A stretch of DNA of 64,000 nt, taken from the NCBI GenBank assembly GCA_037379345.1, contig CM074523.1:31883678-31947677 (forward strand). Reading direction: 5' to 3'. A model generated the notes under the pieces. That model saw only the letters and a list, made by a program, of their open reading frames with translations. It did no database searches and had not been told where the DNA came from. This DNA is from Perna viridis (lineage: Eukaryota). Made by a program: the position numbers and the translations under genes. Below, piece after piece: positions 38,001-62,000 of the stretch (its first letter is position 1; each line of letters begins with the position of its first letter).

Positions 38001-41000
38001 GTTGTGTTTAAACAAAATGTATTAATTTTCAAGTACATCTGCAAAGATTATTTAAACTATTTCTATTTAAAATTTGATACAGAACTATAAAGAGTTAGTT
38101 AATGAAGGATTAGAACAGCCATTTTTAAACTATTAAGAAATTAACTGGTAATTGACTACTGTGAAACCAATCAAATCAGAATCCATTTTGAACTTTAAAA
38201 TGTGTTTGGTTTAGACAGGTGTTCAGTTTACCAAGGTTTAAATTATGTTTTCACTGATATTAAGAGACTTGAAAAAGTGTCTGGTTTAGACAGGTGTTGT
38301 TTTTTACGGTTTTTGGTGTAGACAGGTTTAACTGTAGATGATTTTTTTATTTACTAGTTTATGGTTTGAAGTTTTAAGAAATTAATTAACTTATCATAAA
38401 TGGCTTGCTTATGGCTCTGTAGACAGTTACGTTGCCTTATTTGGAATAATGTAGATTAATTTGCATAATGGGATAGAGTTTATCGTTGGTAAGTTATTTT
38501 AACATTAGATTTGACCAAGAGATACACTATATTTATTTACATGTATGTTTAAACTTATTTTAAGGGATTAAGGCTTAAACATGTTTATAATAACAATAGG
38601 TCCCTGACATAATAATTATTTTTGTTGTTGCCCAAGTTGTTAGTGTTATTGCTCTGTTAAATTTGGTCTGTATGTCTGTAAATTCCATTGATCTTTTTTG
38701 TCTTTAAAGACATAAGGTAAGAATTTTTACTTCTTTTTTTTTTTTATAAAAGTGAAACATTTTAATGAAACTCTTTTTCAATTAGACCCATACTTAATTT
38801 CTACATACTTTGTCCATGAGTTTAATTTTATATACTTGCTATATAAACATGCCTGCTGTGAATACAAAAATATTCATAGTCAATTGTCTTCATTTTGGTG
38901 CAGTGACTCATTTTAATCTGTTTTTAAATTCTTCAATCCTTATATCTTTATATTAAGGGAAGATTGCTTTTGTTAAAAGTGGTAAAATTTAAAATGAACT
39001 GAAGAGAAATTTAATATAAATTGTAGTTATAGTAATTTTTGGTGCGTAATATTTTTGACATTTTGTGTTGTATACCATAAATGGTTTTATATTTTGTAAC
39101 TTGTAGAAAAAGCTTTGTTGCTGACTATTATAATGCTTGTCTAAAATATTGCTATGAAGAACCATTTAAAATCTTACAGTAATTTTAATAATTTCTACCA
39201 GTACAGTACATCTGGCCTTGTTAGAGCTGTAGGGTAAATCTACATATCTGTACTACAGTAATGGGAAAATTAAGTAAGAAATTCTGAGACATCCATTCAT
39301 AACTGTGTCAGACCTTGTAGTCATAAGTCTATTGTTTTCATCTGTAAGGTACAATAGTGGACTAGTATGTATAAGAATAGGGATGGTTTGGAATGTTTTA
39401 CAACAGTGGACCTTACTTGTATGTATAGGAATAGGGATGGTTTGGAATGTTTTACAACAGTGGACCTTACTTGTGTATATAGGAATAGGGATGGTTTGGA
39501 ATGTTTTACGCCTTGAAAGTAAATATATATAAATCAGTAGTTTTATTTATGGTGAAACGTTCTCAACCAACCCTTTTTTTACTCTTTTTTGTTTTTGTTT
39601 CGAAAGTTACTTCATTTATACTGGTATAAAATGCTTTTTAATATACTAAAACCAATTTCAATTTTAATCTCTTTACTGTGGTTTAGACAAGCAGGTATAA
39701 ATTGCATTGAAATTGATATGACTAACTTTCAGAAAATGTCTGGTTTATGCTGGTTGCACTGTGATAATTGCTAAGTCTGTTCACTTTGATACTTAACTTA
39801 CATACACCTTCATGTAAGAATTATGCACACACAAAAACAGAAAAAGACAATAATGCTGGAAGTTTTTGTCAACTTTCTACTCATATTTATATTAAAATTA
39901 CCAACATGGGTTGTATCATAAGTAAGGAAAGAGTTCTGTTTAGCTGAATTCTAATAAAATGTGTCTTGCCAAATTTTTCACTTAAGTAGCAGTCTTTTTA
40001 AACATCAGACAGAAGGTGATTTTATGCATGTCAAAAATTCACCAAATTCATTATTATTTTTAATTCAGAATCAATTACAAACATGTAACCATGCAGTCTT
40101 AGATTTTCATTTGTTTGTTGCATTTTTGAGATAAAAAATTATATAGATTGTACAAGCATTTTGTTGATTTATTGTGAGATAAATTCATGGTTTTCTCAAA
40201 AATACAGATCTGAATGCATGAAAAATTATTGTTATGTAAAAATATGACATCCAAATACCCAAAAACATTGTTTGTTAGGTGGGCTTTGTCTACATCACGA
40301 ATCAACCCTACCATGGGCTGTGTCTGTACTTTATATGGACTGGTACTTAAGAACATAAATAGTAATTTTTTTTTCCAACATTAAATTCTCTTTTATTACC
40401 TTGAGGGGGTCTTAAATATTGGATGATTTTATACTATTAAGGAAGGTGTCAACAACTATGGACTGGTACCCATTTCTATTTCAGGGACCAGCTAATAATA
40501 TAGATACCATGAATCACTTTGGCTTATTATCTCATATTAAAATGTAGTTTATTATTTTTGTATTTTCAGGAATTTGTTGATGAGCTTCATGGTAAAGAAT
40601 CAGAGATGGCCAATGCTTTTAAGATTGCTGATGGATTTAGAGATGAAGCCCAGGTTTGTAGAATTTTTATTACCCTAGTCAGCAAGTGGGCCATGTATAA
40701 GGTCTGTCCGTCTGTCATTATGTCAGTTAAATTACAACTCTCTTTCAGTGAATGGATTCATATTTAGTATGTGGCTGTATAAAGATACATTGTAAGTGGT
40801 CTGATATCAGCTTCCTGTTTAAGTAGAGGTAGTCACTAAGGACAATTCATGCTAGTTCATATTTGTTTTTCAAGACTAAGTTCTAGTTTGTAGTCATGTT
40901 TATACCTTAAAAACTTGTGAAAATGGTAGAATGGAATTGTGATAATTTGGCATAAATCATGCAAAGAATATATCAGCCCAGTAAAAGTTTTCTGTAGAGA

Positions 41001-44000: not shown

Positions 44001-47000
44001 TGTTAAAAGTAAATTTGAACCTTGTACCTATCTGAACTTGATCTCAGATCCTTTCATAAAGTGTATATTCCAAACACCTCTGCAGTCCAAAACTTTTCAG
44101 GTCAGACAAGTTTTACTTTATATCTTATGTGGAACCCTCCTCCCAGTTGGTGGTGTAGTGTGTTGGCTTGTGAATTCTGGGTGTTGTGGAACCCTTCCCC
44201 CAGTTTGTTGTGTAATGTGTAGGCCGGGCTTGTGAATGCTGGGTGTTGTGGAACCCTCTCCCAGTTGGTGGTGTAGTGTGTTGGCCTGTGAATGCTGGGT
44301 GTTGTGAAACCCTCCCCCCAGTTGGTTGTGTAGTGTGTAGGCCCGGCTTGTGAATGCTGGGTGTTGTGGAACCCTTTCCCAGTTGGTTGTGTAGTGTGTT
44401 AGCCTGTGAATGCTGGGTGTTGTGGAACCCTCCCACCAGTTGGTTGTGTAGTGTGTAGACCTGACTTGTGAATGCTGGGTGTTGTGGAACCCTCTCCCAG
44501 TTGGTCGTGTAGTGTGTTGGCCTGTGAATGCTAGGTGTTGTGGGTTCTATACCTGGACAAAAGGTACCGTAGACTTTAGAATTGGTAGTCATCGCTAGTC
44601 AACCATGAATGTGGTATATTTGTTAAAAGTTGATGACTACTTGGCTCAGGGTCTGAATAATGTGTTAAGGATAAGGTAGAATGTCTTCCTGCTGGCTGTT
44701 TCTTCTTGGAGTTAGCATATTAAATTTCTGCTTAGTGCGTCAAACTAGTCTGAAGCTAGGTGTGTTTGATTAGTAAAAAAGTCTTGTCTTAAAATGCATG
44801 GAGTATTTGTGAAGATAATAACTACATTCAACCAATCAATGTTTGTAGAGAAATTTGTATTTCTTTAAGACCAAAGTCCACATACCAATAGTTCTCAAAT
44901 AGAAAGTTATAGGTGAAATTAAAAGAATAAATATACAGAGCAATGGATAAAGAAATTGTGCATGTCATCCAATACACAAAAGTTTAATCAAAGTGGTAAG
45001 TAAACAATTCCTTATTCACCCAATACACAACTGCTAATAAAAAGTATAAATATTCACTTTGGATTGTTGTTGATCTGATTTTCTCAATACACAAGTGTTC
45101 AATTCAGACAAAACTGGAAAGGTATTTCTTTACTATTGAAATGAATAGTCTGTATATCTTTTGAAGTACTTAAAAGCGGTCTTAAATCCTATTTTAAGTG
45201 GTTTTAACTCTTTAACGGGTGTCAGATTGAAACTGGTCTGGTTTTGGTAGGTGTGTACCTACTGGTTATGATAGATGCTATATTGAGATGTTTATACTTT
45301 CACTTCACAGGTCAAGTGGGTATGAATTATGTGTACCCAAGTCCATGTCAGTTCATCCATTTGTCCATCGATTCGTCAAAGCTAATGAATCAATTCATAT
45401 TTTCGTTCTATAACAAGTCTATGGTCAAATTTGGTTGTGGTGTATAAATAGGGATAATTTGAAATCCAGATCTCATGGCAAAAAGACCTTCAACTGAATT
45501 CCAGTTTCATGAACATAATTTTCTTCTAATTTATAGCAGAAATCTTGACTCTGTTTTTAACGTCTATTTCTGTGATCACCAGAACTTTTCCTCTAGTCAT
45601 CTTTTTGTACTCTCTCGTCCTGTTGTGTAGTATCAGTTAAACATTCAACCTTTGCTTTGTAAAAGACAGTAAGTTCCCTTTGTTCCCCTATAATATAGCA
45701 TGGAGTTGACTTGGTCATGAAAGTATTTACTATTTAGTATTTTTGTTATTCCCTGGTGTATTTTAGATTTTACCATATGCATTCCTTTTGCTATAGAATA
45801 GAACTCAAGGAAACATTAGTTAATGTAATGTGATGATACATGTGTACATTGCTAATACTTTCTATCACTTGTAGTATTGTGACCTTTTTGCTCTTGACCA
45901 GTTTCTTATGTAAGTTTAAAAGAACATTTCTCCTGGTTGCATGAATGACATTTTCATTCTGTAAAGGTAAAGAAGTTTAGAATCTCGTTAACCAGGAGGG
46001 TTTTATAGACTTATTTAAACTTGCTAATTGATTTCATCAATTATAATATGAATAATTCAGGTATTATTTATAGTACATGTACTTATTTTTTTTATTTAAT
46101 TTCTTCCATAATATCCCTTTAGAACTTTCATACATTTAATTGGTTTCTTGCTCACAGAATTGACCTGAATGTTCTTTTAAAGTCTAGAATTCATGCCTTG
46201 AACTGATTACCCTTATTTCTAATTCCTTGTTCAATATATAAATACATACAATCATCTAAAATTTACAATGAGTAGATATAAACTAAATATATAAGACTCC
46301 AAATCAAGTATTCATCTTTCATTGTGCTGTGTAAGAGTGAAAAACTACATAACAAACTCTTTATGTTCCTAGTTGCTGAAATGAGAGTTATCTCCCATTT
46401 GCAAAATTGTCACAAAATAAATGCTCTTTGACTCTTAGTACAAAACAGCCTAGCTGGTGTTGTGATGTGTTGGATTAGTAAAACTTCCTACATCATAATT
46501 ACTTTTTTAAGTTCATTAATACTTTATATGTTGTTGTATTAATTTAAAAATCAATTACCTTTTCTGTAAAGTCAGCACTGCTGGAATCAAATTCAGACTT
46601 TTAAAAACATTTCAATGAAATATGACACTACCATTTATGTAATTGATTCCAATGTGTCTGTAATATAATTCTATTAATAGATTTATGGATGAATGGTTTT
46701 CCAATTAAAAGTGAAACAAGTGGGGGTCACTAATAACTTCAGTGGGGTGTGAAGAATATTTTAATACATGTACAAGAAGGTCAATCACATGTGCACTAGC
46801 TATGGTTTGCTATAGTTAATTTGCCCTGCTGGGTTGAAATTAACTCTAAGGATGTCCTTAAGGGAATACTATTGAAAACAAAAATATAGGCCTGCACTAA
46901 AAATGTATGCATTTGCTATTCTTCTACTGAGTATACTTTTTAGTTCCTTACTGGCATTTTTCATGGATGAAGACTTTAGGTTCGCACTCTGTCCATCTGG

Positions 47001-50000
47001 CAGTCTGGCAAATCAGTTTTCCGCCCTTTTTTCGTCATGTTAGCAGATATTAATTTGACATTTGGTTTTTTTACTTTACGATTGCAAGTTACAGATCAAG
47101 AACAAATTTTGTTCCATTCTGTTGGTTGTTTTTTGCTGAGTTATGGCCCTTGGACAGACAATACATGCAATAACTCAGTTTTCTACTCTTTTCTTCATCA
47201 TACTTCCAGGCAGTCATTTAATATTTGGTACATTATTTTGCCATGGCAAGTTACAGATCAAGTCTGAAAATTGTTCCAGTCTATTGTTTTAATTTTTTAC
47301 TGAATGAAGACCCTTGGACTTAGAAAATTAAGTTTGCATAGTGTTCTCCTCAACAGAAATTTCTTTTGGTTTTGGTAGGGGATTTTGTATTGCCATGAAT
47401 TACTTGTAGAAAGCTTGTTAAAGTATCATTTTATTTTCTGTTCTCCTTTAGATTTAGATTAAGCAATGTTTTATATTAATGGGTTATACCTACATGTACC
47501 TCTCTGTAGTGACATTATTAATGGGTTATACCTACATGTACCTCTCTGTAGTGTTTTATATTAATGGGTTATACCTACATGTACCTCTCTGTAGTGACAT
47601 TATTAATGGGTTATACCTACATGTACCTCTCTGTAGTGTTTTATATTAATGGGTTATACCTACATGTACCTCTCTGTAGTGACATTATTAATGGGTTATA
47701 CCTACATGTACCTCTCTGTAGTGACATTATTAATGGGTTATACCTACATGTACCTCTCTGTAGTGTTTTATATTAATGGGTTATACCTACATGTACCTCT
47801 CTGTAGTGTTTTATATTAATGGGTTATACCTACATGTACCTCTCTGTAGTGACATTATTAATGGGTTATACCTACATGTACCTCTCTGTAGTGTTTTATA
47901 TTAATGGGTTATACCTACATGTACCTCTCTGTAGTGACATTATTAATGGGTTATACCTACATGTACCTCTCTGTAGTGACATTATTAATGGGTTATACCT
48001 ACATGTACCTCTCTGTAGTGACATTATTAATGGGTTATACCTACATGTACCTCTCTGTAGTGTTTTATATTAATGGGTTATACCTACATGTACCTCTCTG
48101 TAGTGTTTTATATTAATGGGTTATACCTACATGTACCTCTCTGTAGTGACATTATTAATGGGTTATACCTACATGTACCTCTCTGTAGTGACATTATTAA
48201 TGGGTTATACCTACATGTACCTCTCTGTAGTGTTTTATATTAATGGGTTATACCTACATGTACCTCTCTGTAGTGTTTTATATTAATGGGTTATACCTAC
48301 ATGTACCTCTCTGTAGTGACATTATTAATGGGTTATACCTACATGTACCTCTCTGTAGTGTTTTATATTAATGGGTTATACCTACATGTACCTCTCTGTA
48401 GTGACATTATTAATGGGTTATACCTACATGTACCTCTCTGTAGTGACATTGTTAATGGGTTATACCTACATGTACCTCTCTGTAGTGTTTTATATTAATG
48501 GGTTATACCTACATGTACCTCTCTGTAGTGACATTATTAATGGGTTATACCTACATGTACCTCTCTGTAGTGTTTTATATTAATGGGTTATACCTACATG
48601 TACCTCTCTGTAGTGTTTTATATTAATGGGTTATACCTACATGTACCTCTCTGTAGTGACATTATTAATGGGTTATACCTACATGTACCTCTCTGTAGTG
48701 TTTTATATTAATGGGTTATACCTACATGTACCTCTCTGTAGTGTTTTATATTAATGGGTTATACCTACATGTACCTCTCTGTAGTGACATTGTTAATGGG
48801 TTATACCTACATGTACCTCTCTGTAGTGACATTGTTAATGGGTTATACCTACATGTACCTCTCTGTAGTGACATTGTTAATGGGTTATACCTACATGTAC
48901 CTCTCTGTAGTGTTTTATATTAATGGGTTATACCTACATGTACCTCTCTGTAGTGACATTATTAATGGGTTATACCTACATGTACCTCTCTGTAGTGACA
49001 TTATTAATGGGTTATACCTACATGTACCTCTCTGTAGTGACATTATTAATGGGTTATACCTACATGTACCTCTCTGTAGTGACATTGTGCAAACATATTA
49101 GATTTACCCTTAAGTATATTTTAACAAGCTTGAAAGCATATCTTTTGTAACCTAAGAAACTATTAAAGCTTTGCATTTAGTTTTATAATCATAGAACTTG
49201 TGTTCTAAGTTTAGCATACATGTATATCATTAAAATCTTGTTTCAATCCAAGTCTACACCTTGAAACTATTGGATTTTAAAATTGTAACATTAAGAACTT
49301 CATCAATATGATACAGTGGTTAAGCATTGGACCAATATTGATTATTATACATCGTTACTTGTATTTTTTTGTCTACAGCTAATACATGCATAGCAACAGT
49401 CACAAACATACTAAATCTTCCAAAGCTTCTATAATGTATTGTACCCCATATTATATAGATAACAGTGATTTACCAAATGTTCCCTGTGCAAAATTTTGGA
49501 TAATTCACACAGTGAAATAAATTTGGTAGTTTCACTCTTGGACTTTCTCCCTCCAAAGCATCACTAAACTTCATATCAATCTGGTGTTTACAAAATGTGA
49601 ATTTTATGTTCAACAAACAAGGGAGAAAACAGGATGATATTGTAAATAACACAATATAATCATTAGTGCTTAGAACACATTAAGGTACAACTATTGCACG
49701 GAACTGGTGATCAAATTTTGGTTATAATTTCTCTCCAATTAATTATCCCATTATTCAATCACACTTGTTGAAACTGACAATTATTTCCATTCTGTTGACA
49801 AGTTTGAGAACCACTTTCTGAGTTAGAGTTATCTCCCATAATCAGGTAATTACGACCATGTTAGTCAACATTTCCCAAAATTTATCACTACTATTTGTTA
49901 TTCTTAACTAACAATACAATAGATAACTTCAAATACACTCAAGTGTACTTCAAATCTCAAGTTGGAGCCAGTATCGGGTATATAAGGAGAGAGCTTAGCA

Positions 50001-53000
50001 TAAATTACACACCTGTCTAGAGCCAGGTCATTTTATTTCACATCAAGTATGGATGAATATTTTCCAATAAGTGGGATCTGCAAAAAAAGGGGGTTTGTAG
50101 GCTATTATTGGTCACTTTTTTGTTCAATGAATGTACAATTTAAGTTAGTTTTAGAGCAAAAGAGTATGGAATCCCTTGATGTGCCATTTCATGTATATTA
50201 TATGCTTTGATGAAAATACAAAGTGACTAGCAGTTAAATATAGTCAGAAATTATGTCACTTTGAGAAGTACAATGATAAATTGTTTCTTTGAATAAGTTT
50301 GGTGTCTGTTTCAAGTGTGACAACAGTTTTTGTTTGCTTGGAAAAATATGCACATTATAAATACTTAAATAGGGTTTATTTGAGATTGAATGTGTAGCTA
50401 CACACATAAAAAAATAATTTGCAGTTGTAAATAAGGTAATCTCCTCTTTTGGACTTTCTCTTTTCACCTGCCTTTAGCCAAGTTGTTCACTTCTGGTGAA
50501 AATTGGTTTGAAGATTTGTGAAAGCCAGAAGCAAACTTATCAGGATTTTTTTCTAACGATACTCAACTTTTGCAAGTGAACTCTATTAAACCTTAGAATT
50601 TATTTTACCAGTACAATGATAAATTGTTTCTTTGAATCAGTTTAGTGTCTGCTTCAAGTGTTAAAACAGTTTTTGTGTGCTTGGAGAAATATGCACATTA
50701 TAAATACCTAAATAAGTTTTATTTGAGATTGAATAGCCGTTAAATTTTTATGTTGAAGTGGGTTCTGGATCACAAGAATATATATAAAGAGGCCTTTTAA
50801 TGTATATATGATCCGCCCTTAGTAGATAAATATCTTTAAATTTTGGACTAATGGAATTTTATCATGGCATTCTTGTAGTTATGTTTTGGGATGTGTAAAA
50901 TCATTTGTCATGAAATAAACTTGGCTGTTAGAACTTAAAAGCATATACATGTACATGTATAAAGTAATAAGAATGGAAAAGCATTCTAGCTCTTTAGCCT
51001 GTTCTTAAGTTAAGATCTTTCTTTTTTTCTTTATTTGGTAGACAGTTTTTGACTGTGTTTTATGGTATTTATCTTTTATTCTTAAAATTAACCTGGGATA
51101 AGGTACTGTGAAAGTACTTTAATTCATGGATACCATTTTTGTGTGGATTATGGAAGAAACAGTTCCTGGATTCTTGTTTTGATGTTTCACAGTCTACACA
51201 TCAATGGAAATCTCTTTTGCATTTGGAACCAAAGTTCGTGGTTTGGCCTACCCACAAAAACAAAGAAAATTGGTACCCTACAAACAAAAGAATTTTACTA
51301 GTAGATCTATTTTGTTTTTATATTCTTTAGTGCATCTGGACCATGACAAAGTACTTACGTAAACATTAGTCCTCAAATTTAACATTAATTACACAGGTGG
51401 GTTTTCAAAACCATAATTTGTATTTCACTTTTTATTAATAGAAAATATTTCCATTAATATAATTTTGAATGAACTATATCAACTAGAAAAAGTCACAATA
51501 ATGGAAGCTTTTATGTTTGAGAAAAAGTTTGTCACTTGACCGTTTTTAAACCAAGATCACTTTTAAAATATCATACTTTACATATTGAAGTAAGTTAGTA
51601 TGTATATATTGGGAAAATATCTAAACCGTAAATTTCATGTGAATTATTGATTGAAATATCTTTTTAAACAAGTTTACTATTGAATTAAGCCTCTGTGTGG
51701 TGAATAATGTTTACTGTTGAAAGCTGCTGATGAAATGGACATTGTTTATAAATTCATGTCAATCCTGATGAAATTGACACTGTGACATTGATTGCTGATT
51801 TTCAAAATTTCACATTAAATAAAGGCATTGTGCTCTTGAAATAGGTTCTGTTTTTCTCCATTGATTATGAAACTTGGCTTTTATGAAATCATAACTATTT
51901 CCAGAAATATATAAATTGGAGAGTCTGAGCATATCATCGTTCAGAATTCTTTGGGTATAATTTAAAATGGTGTCAAATAGGGGGCCAAATTGTAGCATAC
52001 CCTTTACTCATCTTTGGTTGCTGATGTTACAATTCCTCACAAATTCAACTTTTGGGAATGAGATTATATTTTGCAAAGTTTTTGTTGTTTATACAAATAT
52101 AAATACATTGTACACGTGATATAGAAAGTAGGTTTACATTGGCAGTGAAGTACTTAATCATAATACAGGCATTTATTAATGCTTCAATTATCATGAAAGA
52201 TTATTATTGACACAAAAATTAGCACCTTAATGGAATGTTTATACTTGTGTAAGTACCTGTCATATCATAATCGATTTTCCCTAAGATTCCCAGAAACAAG
52301 CATTGTTACTCTACTGCTCTTGGCTCTTTTGTTTCCCAGTGTGGTGGCTTAACAATTTTCAGTATCTATGTTTCTTCAAAGATTGACATTTTGACTGATT
52401 GATGAGACTTGAGATCATATTGAATCAGTATGTTTAACACTTATATAATCACTTACTTGTGTACTAATTACAAGTCGTAGAACTTATTGACAATTAATGC
52501 TGGAATATATGTTCCTGAGTCCAAGGATGAGGTTGATATTGAATTGAATTATCTCACACAACTGCTAAAGAAAGGAACTTCAATCTGGATTTGATATATT
52601 TTGATGAGACAGTTATTTCACTCAATATTCTACTCTTTAGAATGGCTCTGTATTTATTGTATTCTTACATAGCAAATCCTGGAATTAAATGCTGCTCTGA
52701 ATGAAAATATTGATGTATTTATGGTGTTGTTCTATAGTCAGTTAGTGCAGTTTAGTTTTGTTTTGACATTTTCATGTGTTTGGTTTAGTGCTAATTACTT
52801 TGTGTAGTTTTCAAGTGATGCAGGAAATACTGGAATGTATTTCAGTGCTATAACTAGATTTGTAAAGGAATTCATTTAATTGCTATAATTATATTGGATT
52901 GAAATTGATTTCTGAGTATTCTTCCCTGAGTTGCATGCATTGAACACAAATACTTGTTCATATGTTCTGGTGACTCTGGAAAGTTAGTGAATGTTGAAAT

Positions 53001-56000
53001 TGCATGTGAAGCAATCTTTTTGTTAAGGAGAGATTGTTTCACCTCAAAATCTCTTTGTTTTGCAAAATTATTAGTACTACATTGGATTTTGTTGATGAGT
53101 GGTTTTGTATTTAACTTTCTTTTCACTTTTAGATGAAATCAAAGTTGCATATGTATAATCCATGAACATTGATAGACTTTTTTTTTCAAAAGACATTACC
53201 TGTTTATTGGAATTACCTCTTAAATTTGCTTAGAGAATTCCGATACGATTGCATTTTGAAAATCAAGATGCATAAGCTGCATGCCAAAGCAGTGTGCAGG
53301 GAATTAATTGGAAATATTTGTGTGTACAATAAGCCATTGTCAGCAGAATTTGAAATTTAAAATAGAGGATCAAAATATTTATGTTGATTATTAATATTTT
53401 CAATGGAATTATCAGCTGATGTTTGTCAATTGATTTTTGGTTCTAGGCATAATTTAAAGTATGAATATTTCAATACTTATACATGACGGGAAGTATAACG
53501 GATCATCAGGCGATATGTATTTCTTGTTTTCCTGGAATTTTAGCGTGGAATATTGTGACTTTTTCCATCAGAGCTACATTGCTGTGAGAGTTTGTGATTG
53601 TGCAAACTTCTAGTACTTCTGAGGCTTTGTGGAATTGGAAATACATATTTTATTATGTAAATAATGTGATCTGTCTGATTTGGATGAAACTTGGCACAGT
53701 GAGGCATACTTCTTGAAGTAAAATTAGAGAACTTGTGGAATTGTTAAGATATATTGTATTTATCTGTCTGATTGTGGTGATACTTGTGAATAATATTTTC
53801 CTTAAGATAATTTTTCAGTTGGACAGATTGTTATGAAACTTTGCATAAGAATTGTAATGGTGTGAAAATTAATTCACCCTAATGAATTATAAGTAGTATT
53901 TAACAACTTTAAATATATCTGAAGATCAAATGAAAATTTAGACTGACATGGACTGATTGCTGTGAATAGATTGGTTCTCAAAATACCTATTTAAAAAATC
54001 ATTTTTGAATATTATGTTCTGATAGAAGTTGAAAACTATTTGTAAACAGTTTGTATACCAAAGTACATTTTTTTCTACACTATAGATTAAGAACATTATG
54101 GACACTAATAGTATTTTGTTGAAGTGAGGAAATTAATGCTAATGTTGATCTTGTGATTGGTATGGAATGAATGGAAGCTGTGATTGGTGGAAATTCTTAA
54201 TGGAATTTTGTCAAACTTTACTATCGCCTTTTCATATATTATAGGATATATGTCAGGAATATGGACTAACTTTTATATATTTAAATGAAACAGTATTGAA
54301 AGCAAAATAAATGTAAACTGTAAATATTTACACCTTTTAAGTACTATCGCTAGGAATATAAGTACTAGATTGTTTTGATTAGATCAACAGTTCTTTATTC
54401 ATAATTAACCACATTCATATAAACTTAAATGTAACCAAAGATAAATTTCTGGATGTAGAGTACTAGGATTAAACTGTCAATATGTCGAAAATTAAATATT
54501 CATAATGGTAAAATGTTTCAAGTTTTCATAGTGAACCTCATGTAAATATGAACATAGTATCGGAATATGGAGTCGTCTCATACAGGTGTTTAATCTTTAT
54601 GTACGGTCACTTGAATGTTTTAATCCTGTGTAACGATACCATACAAGATACCAGTGAAAAATAAAGGAAATATTGACCTGTTATTTATAGATGACTTTCA
54701 TTTTTATTGTGGCTGTATCATTTCTTAGATGGCCATTAAAATATTTTGTCCTGCATAACCTTATAAAGACCATTGATTGAAGAAAAGAACATTGATCAAT
54801 TTAGATCCATACTGATGGAAGAAGTTGAAGATAAAGTTGATTTGTTAGGTGCTTCTGGAGATCTCTGTTTTCGAAGTTCGTGTGAAATTAAAGTTGGAAA
54901 TGTATGTAAAGGCGATCAGTTGCTGAAAAATTCTTTCCATCAGAAACATGTGATTCCAAATGGAATTGTACTAGGAAATAATAGTGATGTTATGAAGACT
55001 GTTGGAAATGGAGTTTCCGATACAAATTGTTCTTCAGGGTTAGTTTCTGGATGTAAACAGCATTTTGATTTTAATTCTAATAATTATCAAAGTTCTCAGA
55101 ATATGTCATGTGAAAATAAGAATCTACCAGTAGTTGAACATTTTGGTTCAAGAACTCTGTCAGATTTATGGAATGATTGTGATGAAACTTTGCAGCATGA
55201 TTCTGTTTCTAATGCCATTGGAGTAATAGATAATGTCAATAAGTTTGATATTGATCAGAATCTAAATTTTAGGAGATCTGAAAAGGAAGAACAAGTTTTA
55301 GGTGAAAATTGTGCATCTGTAAATTTTGATAGTTCTTTTAATACCAATCCCAGTGAAGCAGCTGGGAAGCAGTTTACTGGAAGTATAAAGGAGTCTGGAA
55401 ATATTGAAAATAGAGCTAGTAATATCACGTTAACTCATGATGCCTCAGATAAAGTTTTTGAATTAGTCTCTGACAGTCTTAAAAACAGACTTCAAAGTTC
55501 AGCTGTTAAAAAAGAAACAGTTGAATGTATAAAGGATGGCAGTTATGCTTGTGATATAGATGCTGTGCCTGATAATTTTGATTTTAAGAAAAGTTTTGAA
55601 GATTTATCTAACATACTAAAGGATGTGGGAGAAGAAGTGCTACCTATTGTCCCTGAAACATCCACTGACAACTTCAAAAATGACATAATTAAAAATACAA
55701 GTTCATTTTTAATTTGTTGTAATGTAGAATCTAGTGGAAAGTTTAAATCTAGAAAGGGGAAGAAACTCTGGAAGAATCCTGATTCTGTGGACGGGCTTGT
55801 TGATGTGACCCCAGATACTGTCATTCTCAAGAAATTCAGAAAATTTGAACATCTGGAGGAGGAAGTGCCAGAATTGTGCACTTGTCCACATCAAGATAGA
55901 TATGCCTTTTCTATACAAGTAAGGGTCTTGGTTTTGTACAAAAATGTTCATGGTTGAAAAATGGGGGGAGTTGGTAGGGTTGGAGGAGGGTCATGCTCTC

Positions 56001-59000
56001 TTGTTTGATTTTAATTGAAAAGTGCACATGACACTTTTATTTCATTGCCTGTTCTTTTATATCCCATTGTGAAAAATAATTTTTGTAAGGCCAAAATAAA
56101 TAAAATTTTTGTTTCCTGCTACCAGCAAGAAAAAAATAAGGTAGGTAGGTAGGGAAATTTTTTTTCCAAAACAATTTACATTGTGCTAATGGGGAAGCAA
56201 TAAAGACTTAAATAGTGCTTGGGCTTAAATTGCTATAAAATATTTAGGGCCGGCACAAAAAAACTAGGGTAGGGTAGCAGGAATTAGAAATATATTTTTT
56301 TTTTTTTTTGCCTAATGGATGTTGATAAGAAACTTGAAAATATAGAGTAAGAGAAATGGTTTACAGCATGAACCAGGTGTTTTTCGATGTAATAGACTTG
56401 AGGGTAATTGAGACATCTCTGTATTCTCCTAATCATTTGGCAGTAAGTGTGTATTAACCACTAAGGAGGCCTTATTATAGAGCTTTTCCTGTCTCAGAAA
56501 GTCCTTCAAGGTAATTCAATTGTATTTTAAATTTTTAAGTAATTGTATTAAACTTATGAAAACTTATGCAAGATTTTATGCATCTGTTAAAAAATCGCAT
56601 TATTTTAAAGCTTTTTGATGTTTGTCCAATAAAATCATGTGTTCTATAATTCAGTACTATGGACTAATCCACGTCTAATCCTTTAAGCTGGTTTAGGATT
56701 TTCTCATGATTTTTTAACTCTCTAGGAAAGGTCAAAAGGTCAGACTGACAGAGGGATTTACTAAATGGGATAAAATTATTTTTCATAATAGGGTTAAAAT
56801 AGTGAAAGTTTTATGAACTTTGGTTACTCATTTTATTTCCTCCCTTTTCCTTTAGTATGTAAGGTTCAAGTTAATGGTTTATGCTTTTTAATGCACGTAA
56901 TACTATTGAAAATACTATTGAAATATCTTGGATTACCAGTTTTCATTGTAAAGTCAAATTATCAAAGAAATGTAAAATTTCAGTGGAGAATTTGGAGGGA
57001 GGGGTGGGTGGGTATATTAGTACCTTCACACATGAAACTAGTTCTGGTTTTGTTGGAGAAAATGCTGTGTGAAAATGAAAAGTAGGACTAAAAATATTAA
57101 AATATGTACTTTTGGATCTAGATAATAATGTGGTTGTAGGAGATTCAGTGGTGCTGTTAGTATACAGACATTTCCTAAGGGAAGATTAGTGGGTAAGGGT
57201 AATAAGGTACTATCTTGCCATGCAGCAGGCTTTGAGATTTGCACTCTTTGACTTAAGCCAGATGTAAATCTTCATTATGACTGGTATATTTTATAACTGA
57301 TGTGGGTCTGGATGTTGAAAAATTTATGAATGAAGGTTCAATGTTGGAAGAACTTTGAATTAATGTCAGACTCTTATAAGATATAATTTAATTCAAAACA
57401 GTTTTGAAGATTTATTGCCTTTTAATATCATTTCATCTTGTGGTGGATTATGTCTTACTCTTAGACAAATCAGAAATCAGGGTCATTCATTTCAGTGATA
57501 TATGACTCATATACACTCAGTCCTTTTAAGTTATTTAGCTTTGAAGGTAAAATAAGATATGACAAAATGGAAGAACAAAGAGGCATTGTAAAACTTTTTA
57601 TTTTAAAACCAAAAAAAAATATTGATTGGGATTCATGCAAGTATTTGAATTTGCCTCTGATTCAAGGCAAGTGAGGATTTGTAAAACTGGTTAAAATTTG
57701 GTTAATTTTTTGTTTTCGAGTGAAAAAAATTGATATTGGACTTCCCCATTGTTTAATGATAGAGAACCTCTATGAATTATTAATAATCATTAGTAAAAAT
57801 AACGACTTTAAATCACTTCTACTCATTTTACAGTTTTAAACTAATATGTTGTAAAAAGTAGCAATGGCTTGTTCCCTATAATGGAACTTTCCAGGACATT
57901 TTGTGCCCATTACTTAGAACTCTCTAGATTTTAACCAAACTTGGTATGCACATAAAATGAATTCTCATGATGTTAACTAATTGTTCAATCAATCTTATCC
58001 TGTAATGAATACCAAGATCAGATGTGGTGACAAATAACAGAGAGCAACACATATTTTTTGTGTGGATGAAATTAAGATATTATATATTCCCATAGTGAAG
58101 CACAAATATTTTCCTTTGGGGATGTCTAATTTTTTTGGAAGTTTCTATCAGACAGAATTTCAGTTTTAAAAAAATATTCTTTTCTTTTAGGAATTTGAAA
58201 AAGAAGCTGAAGCATATAGACAAAGAACACACCAACTTCCACCAATCAGTGAAGAGATTGACAATGATGTCATCGACGATGAGATTGAGTCATTGGAGGC
58301 CAAATATCGTGACATATCAAGAGAATGCTCAAAACACTTGGAAAAACTGGCCTCCATAATGAAACAGAAAAAGGCCTTTGATGATCTTAGTGAAAAACTA
58401 TCAGGGATTTATCCTCAAATCGAAAAGAAACTTATTGGAATAGATGAACAGGAAGTTGGCAAAATGCCTGACAAAGATGCACATGATCTTGCTATTCTGA
58501 AAGACCTAAAAGCTGATTTATTTGGTCAGGAAAGGAAATTGAAAGAACTGACCCAAACAGGGGATAAATTGGTGAAGGGACTTGAAGCAATTAACATGCA
58601 TGGCAAAGCAAATGCAATTCAAAAAATGGTGGACGATTGTCGAGAAGCACATGACAAACTTCAACAGGACATTGCACAGAAAGAGGAAGTTTTTGACTCT
58701 GCCGTCTCCCAGCAACATGACGTCATGAATAGGCTTGATGAACTGACAGAATGGTTGACTGACACTGAAAGTTTTCTGAATGAGGGCAGAGCAATTAGCC
58801 TTGACAAAGACAAACTATTACAACAACTAAAGGAACAGCAACTGATGAATGCTGAAATTGATAGCAATAAAGCTCTACTTGAGCGACTTTCAGAAGCTCC
58901 TGATGTTTCCGTGACAGAAGATACTGAAACAGCCATATTTGATCTCTCAGAAAGGTAGTTTTTTTTAAATTTTTTGGTAATTACAGACTGTTTTTGATGT

Positions 59001-62000
59001 CAAATTGAAAAAAAAATGTATCCAGTAAACAAACATTAAATGGTAAACAGTTGTTTTACTCCGTGAAGCTGATTTCAATTCTAAAGTCTGCAATTTCTTA
59101 ATTTCTTATAATAAAATTGTTGGGATGGTCATTTTTTTTCAAGAAACTGGTATGACATCAGACACCCCTCCACCTCAGCTCCTTTCCAAATAAAAAAGGG
59201 CATAGTTAATCAGGTCTCCATTTATAATACATTATTGCTCCAGTTAAAAGAATAGTTCTCCATTTATTTCATATCTTTATCAAATTTTTATGGTCTATAA
59301 TTACAAACTGTAATACTCTAATAAGGGTGAGACATACTAAGCCTTCTGTTCAGAGAATATATACTATTTAATTAGCTAACATCATCTAATCAGAAATGAC
59401 CAGCAAATTACAAAGTGTTATTTTGTCATTTTGTGTGGGTACTGCTATCTATCAATTAAGTGTGCAGATTGTAATGATAAGTCATGAATTGTCAATAGTA
59501 GAATACTTCATCTGCTATTTGGGGTATGTTAGTCAGTTTTACTGTTAAAGCAAATTAGTGTTGTTATCATTATGTGCAGAATATAATGAAAAGGTTTTGT
59601 AGACTATTGAAATGAGGCAAAAAAAAACCCAAAAAACCCCAGATGTGTCTGTTTAAGGTTACATTAGATGGAAAAATAGGGTAGGTAGGTAGGTATAGAT
59701 AAAATCATTTCATATAAACACTATTGGGAGAATTTTTTGACATTAATAGTTCTCATTTAAAAAAATGATATTTTAGTGGCATTTTATGAAAAAAAATCCA
59801 AATGAAATGTGCTAGGGCAGAAAAAATAGGGTAAGGAGGGTAACCTTAAACCAACATATTTTTTCCTTGCCCAAGTCCTTTTGGTCTGTAGCTGAGGTTT
59901 CTAAATTTATAAAAGACTTGACGAATGTGAATTATTAAGTAGTTTCGGTAAGGCCCTATTTTTGCTCCTGTATTCAGCGTTTTTGAAAGATTTGTTTTGG
60001 TCTATATTAGTTAGTTTATTTGAAAGGATAATGGTTGTAGTAAATACATCTCAGCCGATTTTAGTGATATCATGAGTGTTTTTGACCTAATAGCAGTCAA
60101 AATTAACACATATTAGTGAAATCTTTAATTTTGTTGCATTTTTACACATAATTTTGATGTTTTTTGCCTGAAACAGGAGTGACCGCTTCCATGTTTATCC
60201 AAAATATTGACATATATGTTGTATCTTACAGCACTACACAATATATATAAAGATCAAGAATGAACATGCATGCGGCCACATTCGTTTTTCACAAAAACCA
60301 TCAAGATATGCTGAAATATTGAAATTTTATGGATTTTTCATCATTTAGGCAAATTTGTTGGGATACAATGAAGAGATGCTTTCTGTTTTTGGCCTAAATC
60401 TTACGGAACTAGCTAGTGTAAACACTTCTGTGTACAAAAATGATAAAAATCTTTATTTTGAACAATTTCATATATGTGGCCAAAATTGGGCATAACCAAA
60501 CCATCTCCTTAATATAGCAATTATTTTTTTACAGACTCACTGATGTGGAGCGTAAGGCAGAACTTGCCACAAAAGGTCTTGAAGAAATTGCTAGTCGTAT
60601 GTCAGACTTGGACAATGGGGTGGGACAAATGGACAGCTGGCTAACAGAATCCATTGACCTACTTAAAAATAGATCCAAGGGAAATAATCAAAAGGCTATC
60701 AAAGCTAAAGTTGATGTTTTGTATAATGAAAAACGTGAACGTGAGAGTGACATGGAAAATATCCGTGGTGCTGCTAAATCCATCATGGAGGATGACAGAG
60801 TTTGTGATGAGTTTGCTGTGAAAGAGAATCTTGGTGAAGTTGAAACAAAGTGGCATGAGCTGACAGAACATCTTGTCCAACAAGTATCATTAGAGGTTGG
60901 TACTGGTTAGATTATCAGGGTTGTCAGAGGCAAAAATAAAAACACACATTTATGGCCCCTACTATCAGTTGGAACCCTTAAGTAATCAGTTTTTTTGTCC
61001 ATCTCATGTTGGCTTTGAAACTTTATACTTTTTGGAGTTAAAAACTGGCATGAATGTTATATAATCATCACCCACCCATGAGTCATACATTAGAAAGAAA
61101 TAAACAAACATTACAGAAAATCTCACTTAAATTTGGATACCTTGGGTCAAATGTCTTCTCTATAACTTTCATTCGTTTTGGAGTTCAGTGATAACAGGTG
61201 ATGTTTTTTTTCTATTGTTGAAAAATTAGTACCAGGTTGTCAGTTTTAAATTTTTGTTTGACAATTTTACCTTTATAGGCCTTAACAGAAATAGAAGGAA
61301 TGCTGAAGTATTTGGACAAAGCAGAAAATGACATCAACACAGCAGAGCCTGTCAGTATAGACCCAGAAATACTCACTGTACAGCTGAAAGAACACCATGT
61401 AAGTCTGGGGAAATATCAGTAGGGTAAGAAAAGTTGTAGTTTTGCAGCAGGGTAGGGCTTTTATATTGATACCTGACCAAGGAGAGTCTGACAGTATATA
61501 CCCAGAATTGTTCTCCCTCTGTTTAGTGAGAATTGTACTGTCCATTTCTCTGAGGGTACAATGTACCTTCATTTACTTTGTATTGTGCAATTTGTTCTTT
61601 ATTTACATTTGATTTGTTGTTCCAGACATAAAAAAATTCCCTGACTGTTTGTACCTTTTGTATTGCAAATTACTTTTTCCTCATAAGTTCTGTTAAGTTT
61701 TAAAACTGTTCAGAAGGATTTATGATAGAGTTAATGGAGGTTTGATGAATTAAATTTAATTTTGAGGGGATTTTTTGTGTTTCAGTCTTTCAATGACGAC
61801 TTGAATCAAAAAAGGAATGCAGTCAAAGAAATAATCAACAAGTGCAATCGCATGCTTCGTGAGACCACTAATGCACAGACTGACGAGATTAAGTCTCGCT
61901 TGGACAGTATTAGAGCACAGGCTGATATTGTATGCCAACTTAGTGCAGAAAGGTTAAGCCAACTGGAATCTGCTCTCCCATTGGCTACTCACTTTAGTGA

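What the first reader, a model, noticed from the sequence alone, without database searches (positions are those of the whole stretch)
54815..55918. Hidden intronic 368-codon exon: probable internal-start isoform with a novel N-terminus on the spectrin rod
Seen: a 1.18-kb open frame on the gene strand inside the 17.5-kb intron, in DNA where random ORFs are about 60-120 codons. It has no recognisable TE or spectrin motif. An in-frame TAA (54764) precedes the first ATG (54815). The frame reaches CAA|gtaagg at 55918/9 in phase 0, matching the phase-0 acceptor at 58191 (junction ...YAFSIQ|EFEKEAE..., versus canonical ...RDEAQ|EFEKEAE). The nearby AG acceptors I checked (54728, 54768, 54804, 54848) would not join the phase-0 donor at 40653 to this frame, so a cassette exon is unlikely. 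Inference: an alternative first exon giving an isoform without the plakin and plectin-repeat domains (and without any actin-binding domain upstream of the window). It would carry a unique N/S/D/E-rich head with a basic patch (KFKSRKGKKLWK) and Cys motifs (LICCN, LCTCPH). Known analogy: internal promoters of dystrophin and alternative N-termini of MACF1/DST/Shot.
Basis: partly seen in the sequence, partly recalled or inferred. Interest (0 to 1): 0.75.

Follow-up and report, generated by a model that had tools for sequence, protein, structure and literature searches.

The report
Conserved alternative first exon in spectraplakin
A long open reading frame hidden in an intron of a giant cytoskeletal linker gene is a real, evolutionarily conserved coding exon with its own start codon, most likely the head of a shorter protein version made from an internal promoter, a kind of arrangement already known for this gene family.

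Summary
A stop-free frame of 396 codons (54767-55954) has an ATG at 54815, an in-frame TAA at 54764 and CAA|GTAAGG at 55918/9. Chance expectation is about 4e-9 per window. The ORF is single-copy in the 723-Mb genome. It has no Pfam, PDB or transposon signature.

The host gene is a spectraplakin: a plectin-repeat exon lies upstream, spectrin exons downstream, and a GAS2 domain 40 kb past the window.

Homologous ORFs exist in at least three other lineages. All start M-E-(E/N), and all end in one conserved motif that stops at a GT. Neutral drift would not keep such frames open.

In four probable RNA contig sets, low-depth contigs cover 54151-55892. The intron on either side has none.

The splice 55918->58191 was not seen, nor was a transcription start.

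Best reading (about 0.62): a conserved alternative first coding exon. It would give a rod/EF/GAR isoform with a disordered head. This is a new member of a known kind; Shot, MACF1 and DST have internal starts. Interest is modest.

The parts
54815..55918 (+). Coding part of the proposed alternative first exon: 368 codons, ATG to the last codon (CAA) before the donor
   Evidence: Sequence and ORF list. Single copy in the genome. Homologs P0002-P0005. GC by codon position is 0.45/0.33/0.22, the coding-like order also seen in the neighbouring exons.
54764..54766 (+). In-frame TAA closing the frame upstream of the ATG. A second in-frame TAA lies at 54737.
   Evidence: The X2 contig 54760-55050 contains it colinear with the ORF.
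54151..54814 (+). Possible 5' leader, or a pre-mRNA trace. It is covered by low-depth contigs in 2 of 4 runs and contains 20 upstream ATGs.
   Evidence: X2 54151-54305, 54475-54625; X4 54543-54756. for the uATG count.
54869..54901 (+). Conserved N-terminal motif FRSSC-x-I-x-x-G-N, residues 19-29
   Evidence: Invariant columns F19 R20 S21 S22 C23 I25 G28 N29 in 5 of 5 sequences.
55634..55669 (+). Conserved motif E-x-LP-x-V-x-E-x-S, residues 274-285
   Evidence: Invariant E274 L276 P277 V279 E281 S283.
55829..55918 (+). Conserved C-terminal block KKFRKFEHLEEEVPELCTCPHQDRYAFSIQ, residues 339-368, ending at the donor
   Evidence: 66-74% identity between lineages over residues 334-368, against 13-25% in the middle. 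Invariant K340 R342 K343 F344 E345 L347 E348 L354 C355 C357 P358 H359 Q360 D361 Y363 F365 S366.
55919..55924 (+). Splice donor GTAAGG, phase 0
   Evidence: It is the only GTRAG in the ORF span. In all homologs the residue after the conserved block is V (GTN), and the tails after it are not conserved. No contig covers 55893-56106 in any of 4 runs.
55919..58190 (+). Proposed intron of the alternative transcript. It is the 3' part of the canonical 17.5-kb intron.
   Evidence: Zero depth in 4 of 4 runs, except a 32-nt repeat at 56107-56140.
58191..58954 (+). First shared exon (spectrin repeat), phase-0 acceptor. Proposed splice partner.
   Evidence: The Pfam Spectrin hit of the ORF piece 58293-58958 (29.0 bits) lies just under the cut-off of 29.9. 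Relatives of this exon carry precomputed PF00435. The start Q|EFEKEAE is conserved in 5 relatives.
40570..40653 (+). Canonical upstream exon (84 nt, phase 0/0) that the alternative exon would replace
   Evidence: Its last letters are the loose letters before 58189 in 4 of 4 runs.

Best explanation
The ORF is the coding part of a conserved alternative first exon of a spectraplakin gene. An internal promoter somewhere upstream of 54815 would produce a transcript that starts inside the 17.5-kb intron. Translation begins at ATG 54815, and the exon is spliced from the phase-0 donor at 55918/9 to the phase-0 acceptor at 58191. The product would lack everything encoded upstream: the plakin-domain exons, the plectin-repeat exon at 24377-26857 and the first spectrin-like exons up to 40653. 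It would carry the rest of the spectrin rod and the GAS2 (microtubule-binding) end, headed by 368 residues predicted to be disordered. The head has three short conserved motifs. The strongest, (K/R)K(F/Y)RKFE(H/Y)LE...LC-x-CPHQD(K/R)Y(A/T)FS, directly abuts the rod. By analogy with isoform-specific heads of other spectraplakins, the head most likely sets where or with what the microtubule-binding rod isoform associates. Shown: a real coding frame under selection, a conserved start and a conserved donor position, phase compatibility, and a transcribed unit of low abundance ending near the donor. Inferred: the splice partner, the promoter, and any function of the head.
For: (1) Chance is excluded: 396 open codons where stops are 6.9% of triplets, expectation about 4e-9.

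(2) Coding constraint is evident. Homologs P0002, P0003 and P0005 are 80-84% identical to each other. P0004 (437 aa) and the window ORF share only about 30% identity, yet all frames are open. In a neutral-substitution simulation only 0.3% of frames stayed open at about 82% amino-acid identity, and 0 of 2000 at 43% or less. Length variants inside clusters are in-frame (P0051 427 vs 437 aa; P0064 275 vs 286 aa).

(3) The start is conserved: 5 of 5 aligned sequences begin M-E-(E/N), and FRSSC lies 18-19 residues in.

(4) The end is conserved. Residues 334-368 are 66-74% identical between lineages, against 13-25% in the middle. Conservation stops at a V (GTN) codon in every lineage, and the tails of 10-24 residues to the next stop are unrelated. 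This is as expected for a splice donor.

(5) The phases match. The start of the partner exon is conserved in phase 0 in 5 relatives.

(6) Four contig sets guessed to be RNA, from four studies, give 11 listed contigs at depth 2-4 on 54151-55892. All 13 bins covering 53300-54087 and 56255-58027 are zero in all 4 runs. Nothing covers 55893-56106. The neighbouring canonical exon sits in 4-8 kb spliced contigs at depth 20-43.

(7) Contigs run colinear through the in-frame stop and through the acceptors at 54728, 54804 and 54848. The frame therefore cannot be entered from upstream in those molecules.

(8) The host is a spectraplakin with a GAS2 domain on the same strand 40 kb beyond the window.

(9) It is not a repeat: single copy, no flanking direct or inverted repeats, and no Pfam or PDB match.
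Against: No contig joins 55918 to 58191. Table 5 lists no joint at all.

The runs are only guessed to be RNA and are contigs, so strand, starts and ends cannot be read. They were also chosen because they hold words of the ORF, so cover on the ORF itself is partly by selection.

If the leader really reaches 54151 it carries 20 upstream ATGs. The ATG context has C at -3. Both are poor for translation.

The full HMMER scan found no long annotated protein with this head: 3 hits in 1.84e9 representatives, all short stand-alone ORF calls. Isoforms could be hidden under a canonical cluster representative.

I could not obtain DNA of any homolog. It is therefore not shown that they lie in the orthologous intron.

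Differences from the reference in the contigs are 3 synonymous to 7 non-synonymous. That is only weak constraint on the middle part.
Confidence: 0.62

Rival explanations
1. Independent gene nested in the intron. The ORF would belong to its own transcript, either unspliced (a 380-aa protein ending VRVLVLYKNVHG*) or spliced to small exons of its own. It would not be joined to the spectrin rod.
For: No junction to 58191 was seen. Every database entry for the family is a stand-alone ORF call. The head has no spectrin or plakin motif.
Against: Conservation ends exactly at a GT codon, and the read-through tails are unrelated and of different length in each lineage. An unspliced mRNA needs a 3' UTR, yet 55893-58184 has no contig in 4 of 4 runs apart from a 32-nt repeat. 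The stand-alone ORF calls come from unspliced short contigs, so they say nothing about splicing. A short private exon could have been missed at depth 2-4.
Confidence: 0.13
2. Internal (cassette) exon. The frame would be entered from an upstream exon through a weak acceptor at 54804 or 54848, inserting about 350 residues between the plakin/plectin part and the rod.
For: Two AG dinucleotides lie downstream of the last in-frame stop. Giant optional exons are typical of spectraplakin genes (PMC2173965, passages read).
Against: Both acceptors have poor pyrimidine tracts (0.4). They are in phase 2 and phase 1, incompatible with the phase-0 donor at 40653. Contigs X2 54760-55050 and X4 54824-55049 run through them unspliced. 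The Met and the distance to FRSSC are conserved in all lineages. A cassette model would not predict conservation starting exactly at a Met.
Confidence: 0.07
3. First exon of an alternative transcript that skips 58191 or joins a different downstream exon. This is the same promoter idea with another splice partner.
For: The partner is not shown. In X1 a 778-nt contig of depth 6 shares only 34 letters with 58185-58218, so the splicing pattern at this acceptor has at least one unexplained variant.
Against: 58191 is the nearest expressed exon downstream and is in the right phase. Exon 58191-58954 is 764 nt. Skipping it would shift the frame unless it were compensated.
Confidence: 0.1
4. Relic or transposon-derived frame with no present function. 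The contig cover would be pre-mRNA or DNA carry-over.
For: Depth is low (2-4). The runs are only guessed to be RNA and were chosen for holding the ORF. The Kozak context is poor and there are many uATGs.
Against: The ORF is single-copy, has no terminal repeats and no TE domain. The frame is kept open across lineages at about 30% identity, which neutral drift did not reproduce in 0 of 2000 trials. Pre-mRNA or DNA carry-over would also cover the flanking intron, which is empty in 4 of 4 runs.
Confidence: 0.05

Closest known systems
Drosophila Short stop (Shot) N-terminal variants from four transcription start sites, especially the D-type (start 'e')
   Same: A spectraplakin gene with several promoters. 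[quoted passage not shown] 1 legend and section 2.1, passages read; PMC2173965, passages read).
   Different: No sequence similarity was detected. The profile scan of 1.84e9 proteins returned only 3 short ORFs. Here the start lies after the plectin-repeat exon and after the first rod-like exons. The head is long (368 aa), and its splice is not shown.
Mammalian MACF1c and MACF1-4, and the isoform-specific N-termini of MACF1 and dystonin (types 1/2/3)
   Same: Isoforms from different promoters that lack the ABD (PMC4914211, passages read). Dystonin lead sequences carry lipidation sites, dimerisation sequences or a transmembrane segment that set localisation (10.1101/122010, section 2.1 passage). 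[quoted passage not shown]
   Different: MACF1c keeps the plakin domain, and MACF1-4 starts with plectin repeats. The present isoform would lack both. No homology was found. I could not see the review's supplementary isoform maps, so I cannot say where the vertebrate 'additional exon' lies relative to this one.
Internal promoters of dystrophin (Dp260, Dp140, Dp116, Dp71)
   Same: Unique first exons inside introns of a giant spectrin-repeat gene, giving N-terminally truncated rod proteins.
   Different: It is a different gene family. Dystrophin's unique first exons encode only a few residues, whereas this one encodes 368.

Membership tests
Alternative first exon / internal-promoter isoform of a spectraplakin gene | Lies inside a spectraplakin gene, on the gene strand | tested here: met
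   Plectin repeats at 24413-26860, E 3.2e-60. Spectrin exons lie downstream. A GAS2 domain is on the same strand of C13, 40 kb past the window, 70.1 bits.
Alternative first exon / internal-promoter isoform of a spectraplakin gene | Own start codon; the frame is closed upstream and cannot be entered in phase from the preceding exon | tested here: met
   TAA at 54764 and 54737, ATG at 54815. No phase-0 acceptor is available. The Met start is conserved in 5 of 5 sequences.
Alternative first exon / internal-promoter isoform of a spectraplakin gene | Donor in phase with the shared downstream exon | tested here: met
   CAA|GTAAGG in phase 0, and 58191 in phase 0.
Alternative first exon / internal-promoter isoform of a spectraplakin gene | Spliced junction to the shared exon present in RNA | tested here: inconclusive
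   No joint appears in the contigs of 4 runs. The exon's contigs are 150-345 nt at depth 2-4, and none reaches 55918. Contigs drop rare forms.
Alternative first exon / internal-promoter isoform of a spectraplakin gene | Transcription start / promoter upstream of the exon | not testable with these tools
   Contigs cannot show starts. The only lead is a pair of inverted CCAAT-like GTGATTGGT at 54153 and 54180.
Alternative first exon / internal-promoter isoform of a spectraplakin gene | Homologs lie in the orthologous intron of relatives | not testable with these tools
Homolog of known Shot / MACF1 / DST lead sequences | Detectable sequence similarity to those N-termini | tested here: not met
   The profile scan gave 3 hits at E <= 0.001 in 1,835,955,588 proteins, none a long spectraplakin. 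Pfam gave 0 families for 5 of 5 members.
Transposon or viral ORF | Several copies in the genome, terminal repeats, transposase/RT/integrase domains | tested here: not met
   One match in 723 Mb. No flanking repeats in 40000-60000. No Pfam domain.
Independent nested gene | Own 3' end: conserved C-terminus through to a stop, with transcript cover beyond the stop | tested here: not met
   The tails after the GT are unrelated between lineages. No contig covers 55893-56106 in 4 of 4 runs.

The most novel reading that the evidence does not exclude
The head would be a lineage-restricted invention, exonised from intron DNA of one invertebrate clade. Its middle evolves almost freely, but it keeps an invariant C-x-C-P-H-Q-D-(K/R)-Y block fused directly to the first shared spectrin repeat. 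That block would be a new metal-binding or lipid-anchored targeting module. It would turn the microtubule-binding rod/EF/GAR part of a spectraplakin into an actin-independent protein with a location of its own, arrived at independently of the Shot D-type and dystrophin Dp isoforms.
Probability: 0.12. Interest if true: 0.55.

Novelty: new member of a known kind. Interest (0 to 1): 0.35.

Why it matters
Spectraplakin functions are set largely by which N-terminus and which domains an isoform carries. If confirmed, this exon adds an unannotated, conserved isoform that has the rod and the microtubule-binding end but no plakin or plectin part. Its head belongs to no known family. It would improve the gene's annotation and give a testable case of how a disordered, fast-evolving head with a few fixed motifs is attached to a giant scaffold. 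It does not open a long-standing question. Internal starts in this gene family and in dystrophin are textbook.

Tried and rejected
Pfam on the ORF gave one sub-threshold hit (Secretin_N_2, 15.5 bits against a cut-off of 23.4), which I rejected as noise. All 5 family members gave 0 families, and the PDB profile search gave 0.

ESM Atlas returned only plant disordered-protein clusters at 0.86 or less, with recognition 818. No lead came of it.

AlphaFold2 with the 5-sequence alignment gave mean pLDDT 30.6 and pTM 0.15. No fold search was run, because the model is meaningless as a fold. I read it as disorder.

I looked for a junction-bearing protein by searching the 58191 exon. There were 43 hits, and I fetched 14 of the 43 (the longest and the closest). 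All are unspliced ORF calls, and 0 of 14 carry the head's motif.

I looked for homolog DNA twice in metagenome contigs, once with the alignment and once with the JGI member P0053. Both returned nothing. No dN/dS or synteny test was therefore possible.

The search of earlier findings returned nothing near the place. It returned two notes on other pieces of the genome that do not bear on this exon.

Cluster look-up gave no names beyond 'hypothetical protein'. One 48-aa member (P0049) looks unrelated and was ignored.

Supplementary files of the Shot review (isoform maps) were not opened; they may show whether a comparable start exists in vertebrates.

I did not try to name the organism.
Full report
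**What is there.** On the + strand the window has a stop-free run of 396 codons at 54767-55954. The ORF listing reports it as 54773-55957, 394 aa. The sequence shows TAA at 54764-54766, the first ATG at 54815, and 368 codons to CAA at 55916-55918, followed by GTAAGG. In the surrounding 17.5-kb intron 6.9% of triplets are stops, a mean open run of 14 codons. The expected number of runs this long in the whole window is about 4e-9. The next longest + strand runs outside recognised exons are 137, 121, 120 and 119 codons. GC by codon position is 0.45/0.33/0.22. That is the order seen in the plectin exon (0.52/0.35/0.32) and in the 58191 exon (0.59/0.27/0.32).

**The host gene.**
- The 827-codon frame at 24377-26857 is full of plectin repeats (E 3.2e-60).
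- The frames at 58191-58955 and 62268-62741 give Spectrin hits just under Pfam's cut-off (29.0 and 26.6 bits against 29.9). Relatives of the 58191 exon carry precomputed PF00435.
- Shorter open stretches at about 15.7-22.6 kb and 32.7-34.1 kb read like plakin-domain and rod exons (by eye only).
- A GAS2 domain lies on the same strand of the same contig, 40 kb beyond the window's end (70.1 bits).
- None of the 27 CH-domain matches listed for this genome lies on this contig. The list is a lower bound, so I leave the presence of an actin-binding domain open.
- The canonical exon upstream of the long intron is 40570-40653: 84 nt, phase 0 at both ends. The exon after the intron starts at 58191 in phase 0 and ends at 58954.

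**It is not a repeat or a known domain.** The 368 aa match one place in the 723-Mb assembly, their own. No direct or inverted repeat flanks the ORF in 40000-60000. Pfam gives nothing credible for the ORF or for any of 5 family members. A PDB profile search gives 0 matches, and the ESM Atlas gives only weak look-alikes among plant disordered proteins. AlphaFold2 on a 5-sequence alignment gives mean pLDDT 30.6 with two short helices. I read the head as intrinsically disordered.

**Relatives.**
- A word-based search found P0002, 300 aa.
- A full HMMER scan of 1.84e9 representatives with a two-sequence profile found 3 proteins at E <= 0.001: the window's own P0001, P0003 (287 aa) and P0004 (437 aa).
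- A profile word search added P0005, 286 aa.
- P0002, P0003 and P0005 are 80-84% identical to each other. P0004 and the window ORF are each about 30% identical to everything else. That makes at least three lineages besides the window's.
- Their clusters hold 3, 22 and 5 members from Logan, ENA and JGI.
- All are stand-alone ORF calls on short contigs, and none is part of a long annotated protein.

**Conservation pattern.** The pattern of conservation is the main result.
- All five aligned sequences start M-E-(E/N) and have FRSSC-x-I-x-x-G 18-19 residues in.
- All have E-x-LP-x-V-x-E-x-S about 90 residues before the end.
- All end with (K/R)K(F/Y)RKFE(H/Y)LE-x-x-(L/V)-x-x-LC-x-CPHQD(K/R)Y(A/T)FS-x-(Q/K). 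One variant in the P0005 cluster (P0053/P0060) reads L for the P of CPHQD.
- Between lineages, identity is 45-55% in residues 1-30, 13-25% in residues 31-255 and 66-74% in residues 334-368.
- Immediately after the last conserved residue every sequence has V, a GTN codon. An unrelated tail of 10 to 24 residues then runs to a stop. That is what a conserved splice donor followed by intron looks like.
- In the window this is the only GTRAG in the span.

**Neutrality test.** I mutated the window ORF at random. Only 0.3% of 2000 copies kept an open frame at about 82% amino-acid identity, and none did at 43% or below. The frame is therefore maintained by selection. Length variants within clusters are in-frame, though this is partly by ascertainment, since only open frames get called.

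**Transcription.** The look-up of sequencing runs listed 24 runs, all labelled as the same organism.
- Thirteen rows guessed to be RNA hold 0.19-0.45 of the exon's words.
- Three large rows hold 0.84-1.00 and are probably the DNA source.
- Three rows of unknown kind hold 0.33-0.43.
- Five rows hold none.

I laid the contigs of X1, X2, X4 and X9, one run from each of four studies, on 53300-59200.
- The 58191 exon lies in contigs of 4-8 kb at depth 20-43 in 4 of 4 runs. It is spliced on both sides, and the letters before it are the end of exon 40570-40653. This confirms the canonical join and makes it likely that these runs are RNA.
- Eleven listed contigs of 150-345 nt at depth 2-4 lie on 54151-55892.
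- All four bins of 53300-54087 and all nine bins of 56255-58027 are zero in all four runs.
- Nothing covers 55893-56106.
- The only other cover in the intron is a 32-nt repeat at 56107-56140 that belongs to high-depth contigs from elsewhere.
- The cover upstream of the ATG (X2 54151-54305 and 54475-54625; X4 54543-54756) was not selected for.
- The contigs X2 54760-55050 and X4 54824-55049 run colinear through the in-frame stop or through the acceptors at 54804 and 54848. X4 54543-54756 runs through the good-looking acceptor at 54728.

There is thus a discrete, weakly expressed unit. It begins some way upstream of the ATG, is not entered by splicing at those sites, and ends near the donor.

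**Limits of the RNA evidence.** No joint is reported, so 55918->58191 is not shown. The runs are only guessed to be RNA and are contigs without strand or ends. They were chosen for holding the ORF.

**Points against.** If the leader truly reaches 54151 it has 20 upstream ATGs, and the ATG has C at -3. Either the real start is nearer or translation is inefficient. The ten differences from the reference seen in the contigs are 3 synonymous and 7 non-synonymous, two of them in one codon. None lies in the conserved motifs and none creates a stop. That shows little constraint on the middle part. I could not get DNA for any homolog, so synteny and dN/dS remain untested. A search with the 58191 exon gave 43 hits, of which I fetched 14. 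It found only unspliced ORF calls. Five of them show the intron ending in CAG (Q) before (E/D)FE(K/R)E. The phase-0 acceptor is therefore conserved, but no protein carries the junction.

**Explanation.** I put 0.62 on the main reading. This is a conserved alternative first coding exon, driven by an internal promoter and spliced to 58191. It would give an isoform that lacks the plakin and plectin parts and the first rod exons, and keeps the rod and the GAS2 end. Its 368-residue disordered head has its best-conserved block directly abutting the rod. The rivals are:
- the same first exon with another splice partner (0.10);
- an independent nested gene (0.13);
- a cassette exon (0.07);
- a functionless relic (0.05).

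**Comparison with what is known.** Multiple promoters and isoform-specific heads are a standard feature of spectraplakins.
- Shot has four start sites. The D-type lacks the ABD and probably the plakin domain (10.1101/122010, Fig. 1 legend and section 2.1, passages; PMC2173965, passages).
- MACF1c and MACF1-4 lack the ABD (PMC4914211, passages).
- Dystonin heads carry lipidation, dimerisation or transmembrane signals (10.1101/122010, passage).

The present exon works like these but shows no sequence relation to them. Two literature searches listed no paper on spectraplakin isoforms in molluscs among their top results. This is not proof that none exists. I file the finding as a new member of a known kind, of modest interest.

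Noticed in passing
window 58185-58218: In run X1 a 778-nt contig of depth 6 shares only its first 34 letters with 58185-58218. The other 744 letters lie nowhere in 53300-59200. It is neither the canonical partner nor the ORF exon. It may be another upstream partner of the 58191 acceptor, or a divergent intron haplotype.
   Followed up: no
window 54153-54161 and 54180-54188: The only two copies of GTGATTGGT (an inverted CCAAT-like box) in the 64-kb window lie 27 nt apart. They sit at the left edge of the contig cover upstream of the ORF. This is a possible promoter element, but it lies inside one contig (X2 54151-54305), which does not fit a position upstream of the start.
   Followed up: partly
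window 40570-40653: The canonical exon before the long intron is 84 nt with phase 0 at both ends, so it could be skipped without a frame shift. No evidence for or against skipping was obtained.
   Followed up: no
window 47389-49100: A satellite of about 1.7 kb with a 42/43-nt period lies inside the intron, with 32 copies in register. It produces the 119-codon open run at 48742-49098.
   Followed up: no
window 44141-44542: A GC-rich 118-nt unit is repeated three times at 92-94% identity. It accounts for the 155-aa minus-strand ORF at 44125-44592 and the local GC peak of 0.42.
   Followed up: no
window 56107-56140: A 32-nt element in the intron is present in high-depth contigs from other loci in all four runs, with summed depth 17-77. 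It is probably a fragment of an abundant repeat or transcript.
   Followed up: no
G000 C13 (the window's contig) and C1: None of the 27 listed CH-domain matches of the genome lies on C13. C1 has a CH hit and a GAS2 hit 73 kb apart on one strand, which may be a second spectraplakin-like gene. Whether the C13 gene has an actin-binding domain at all is open.
   Followed up: no
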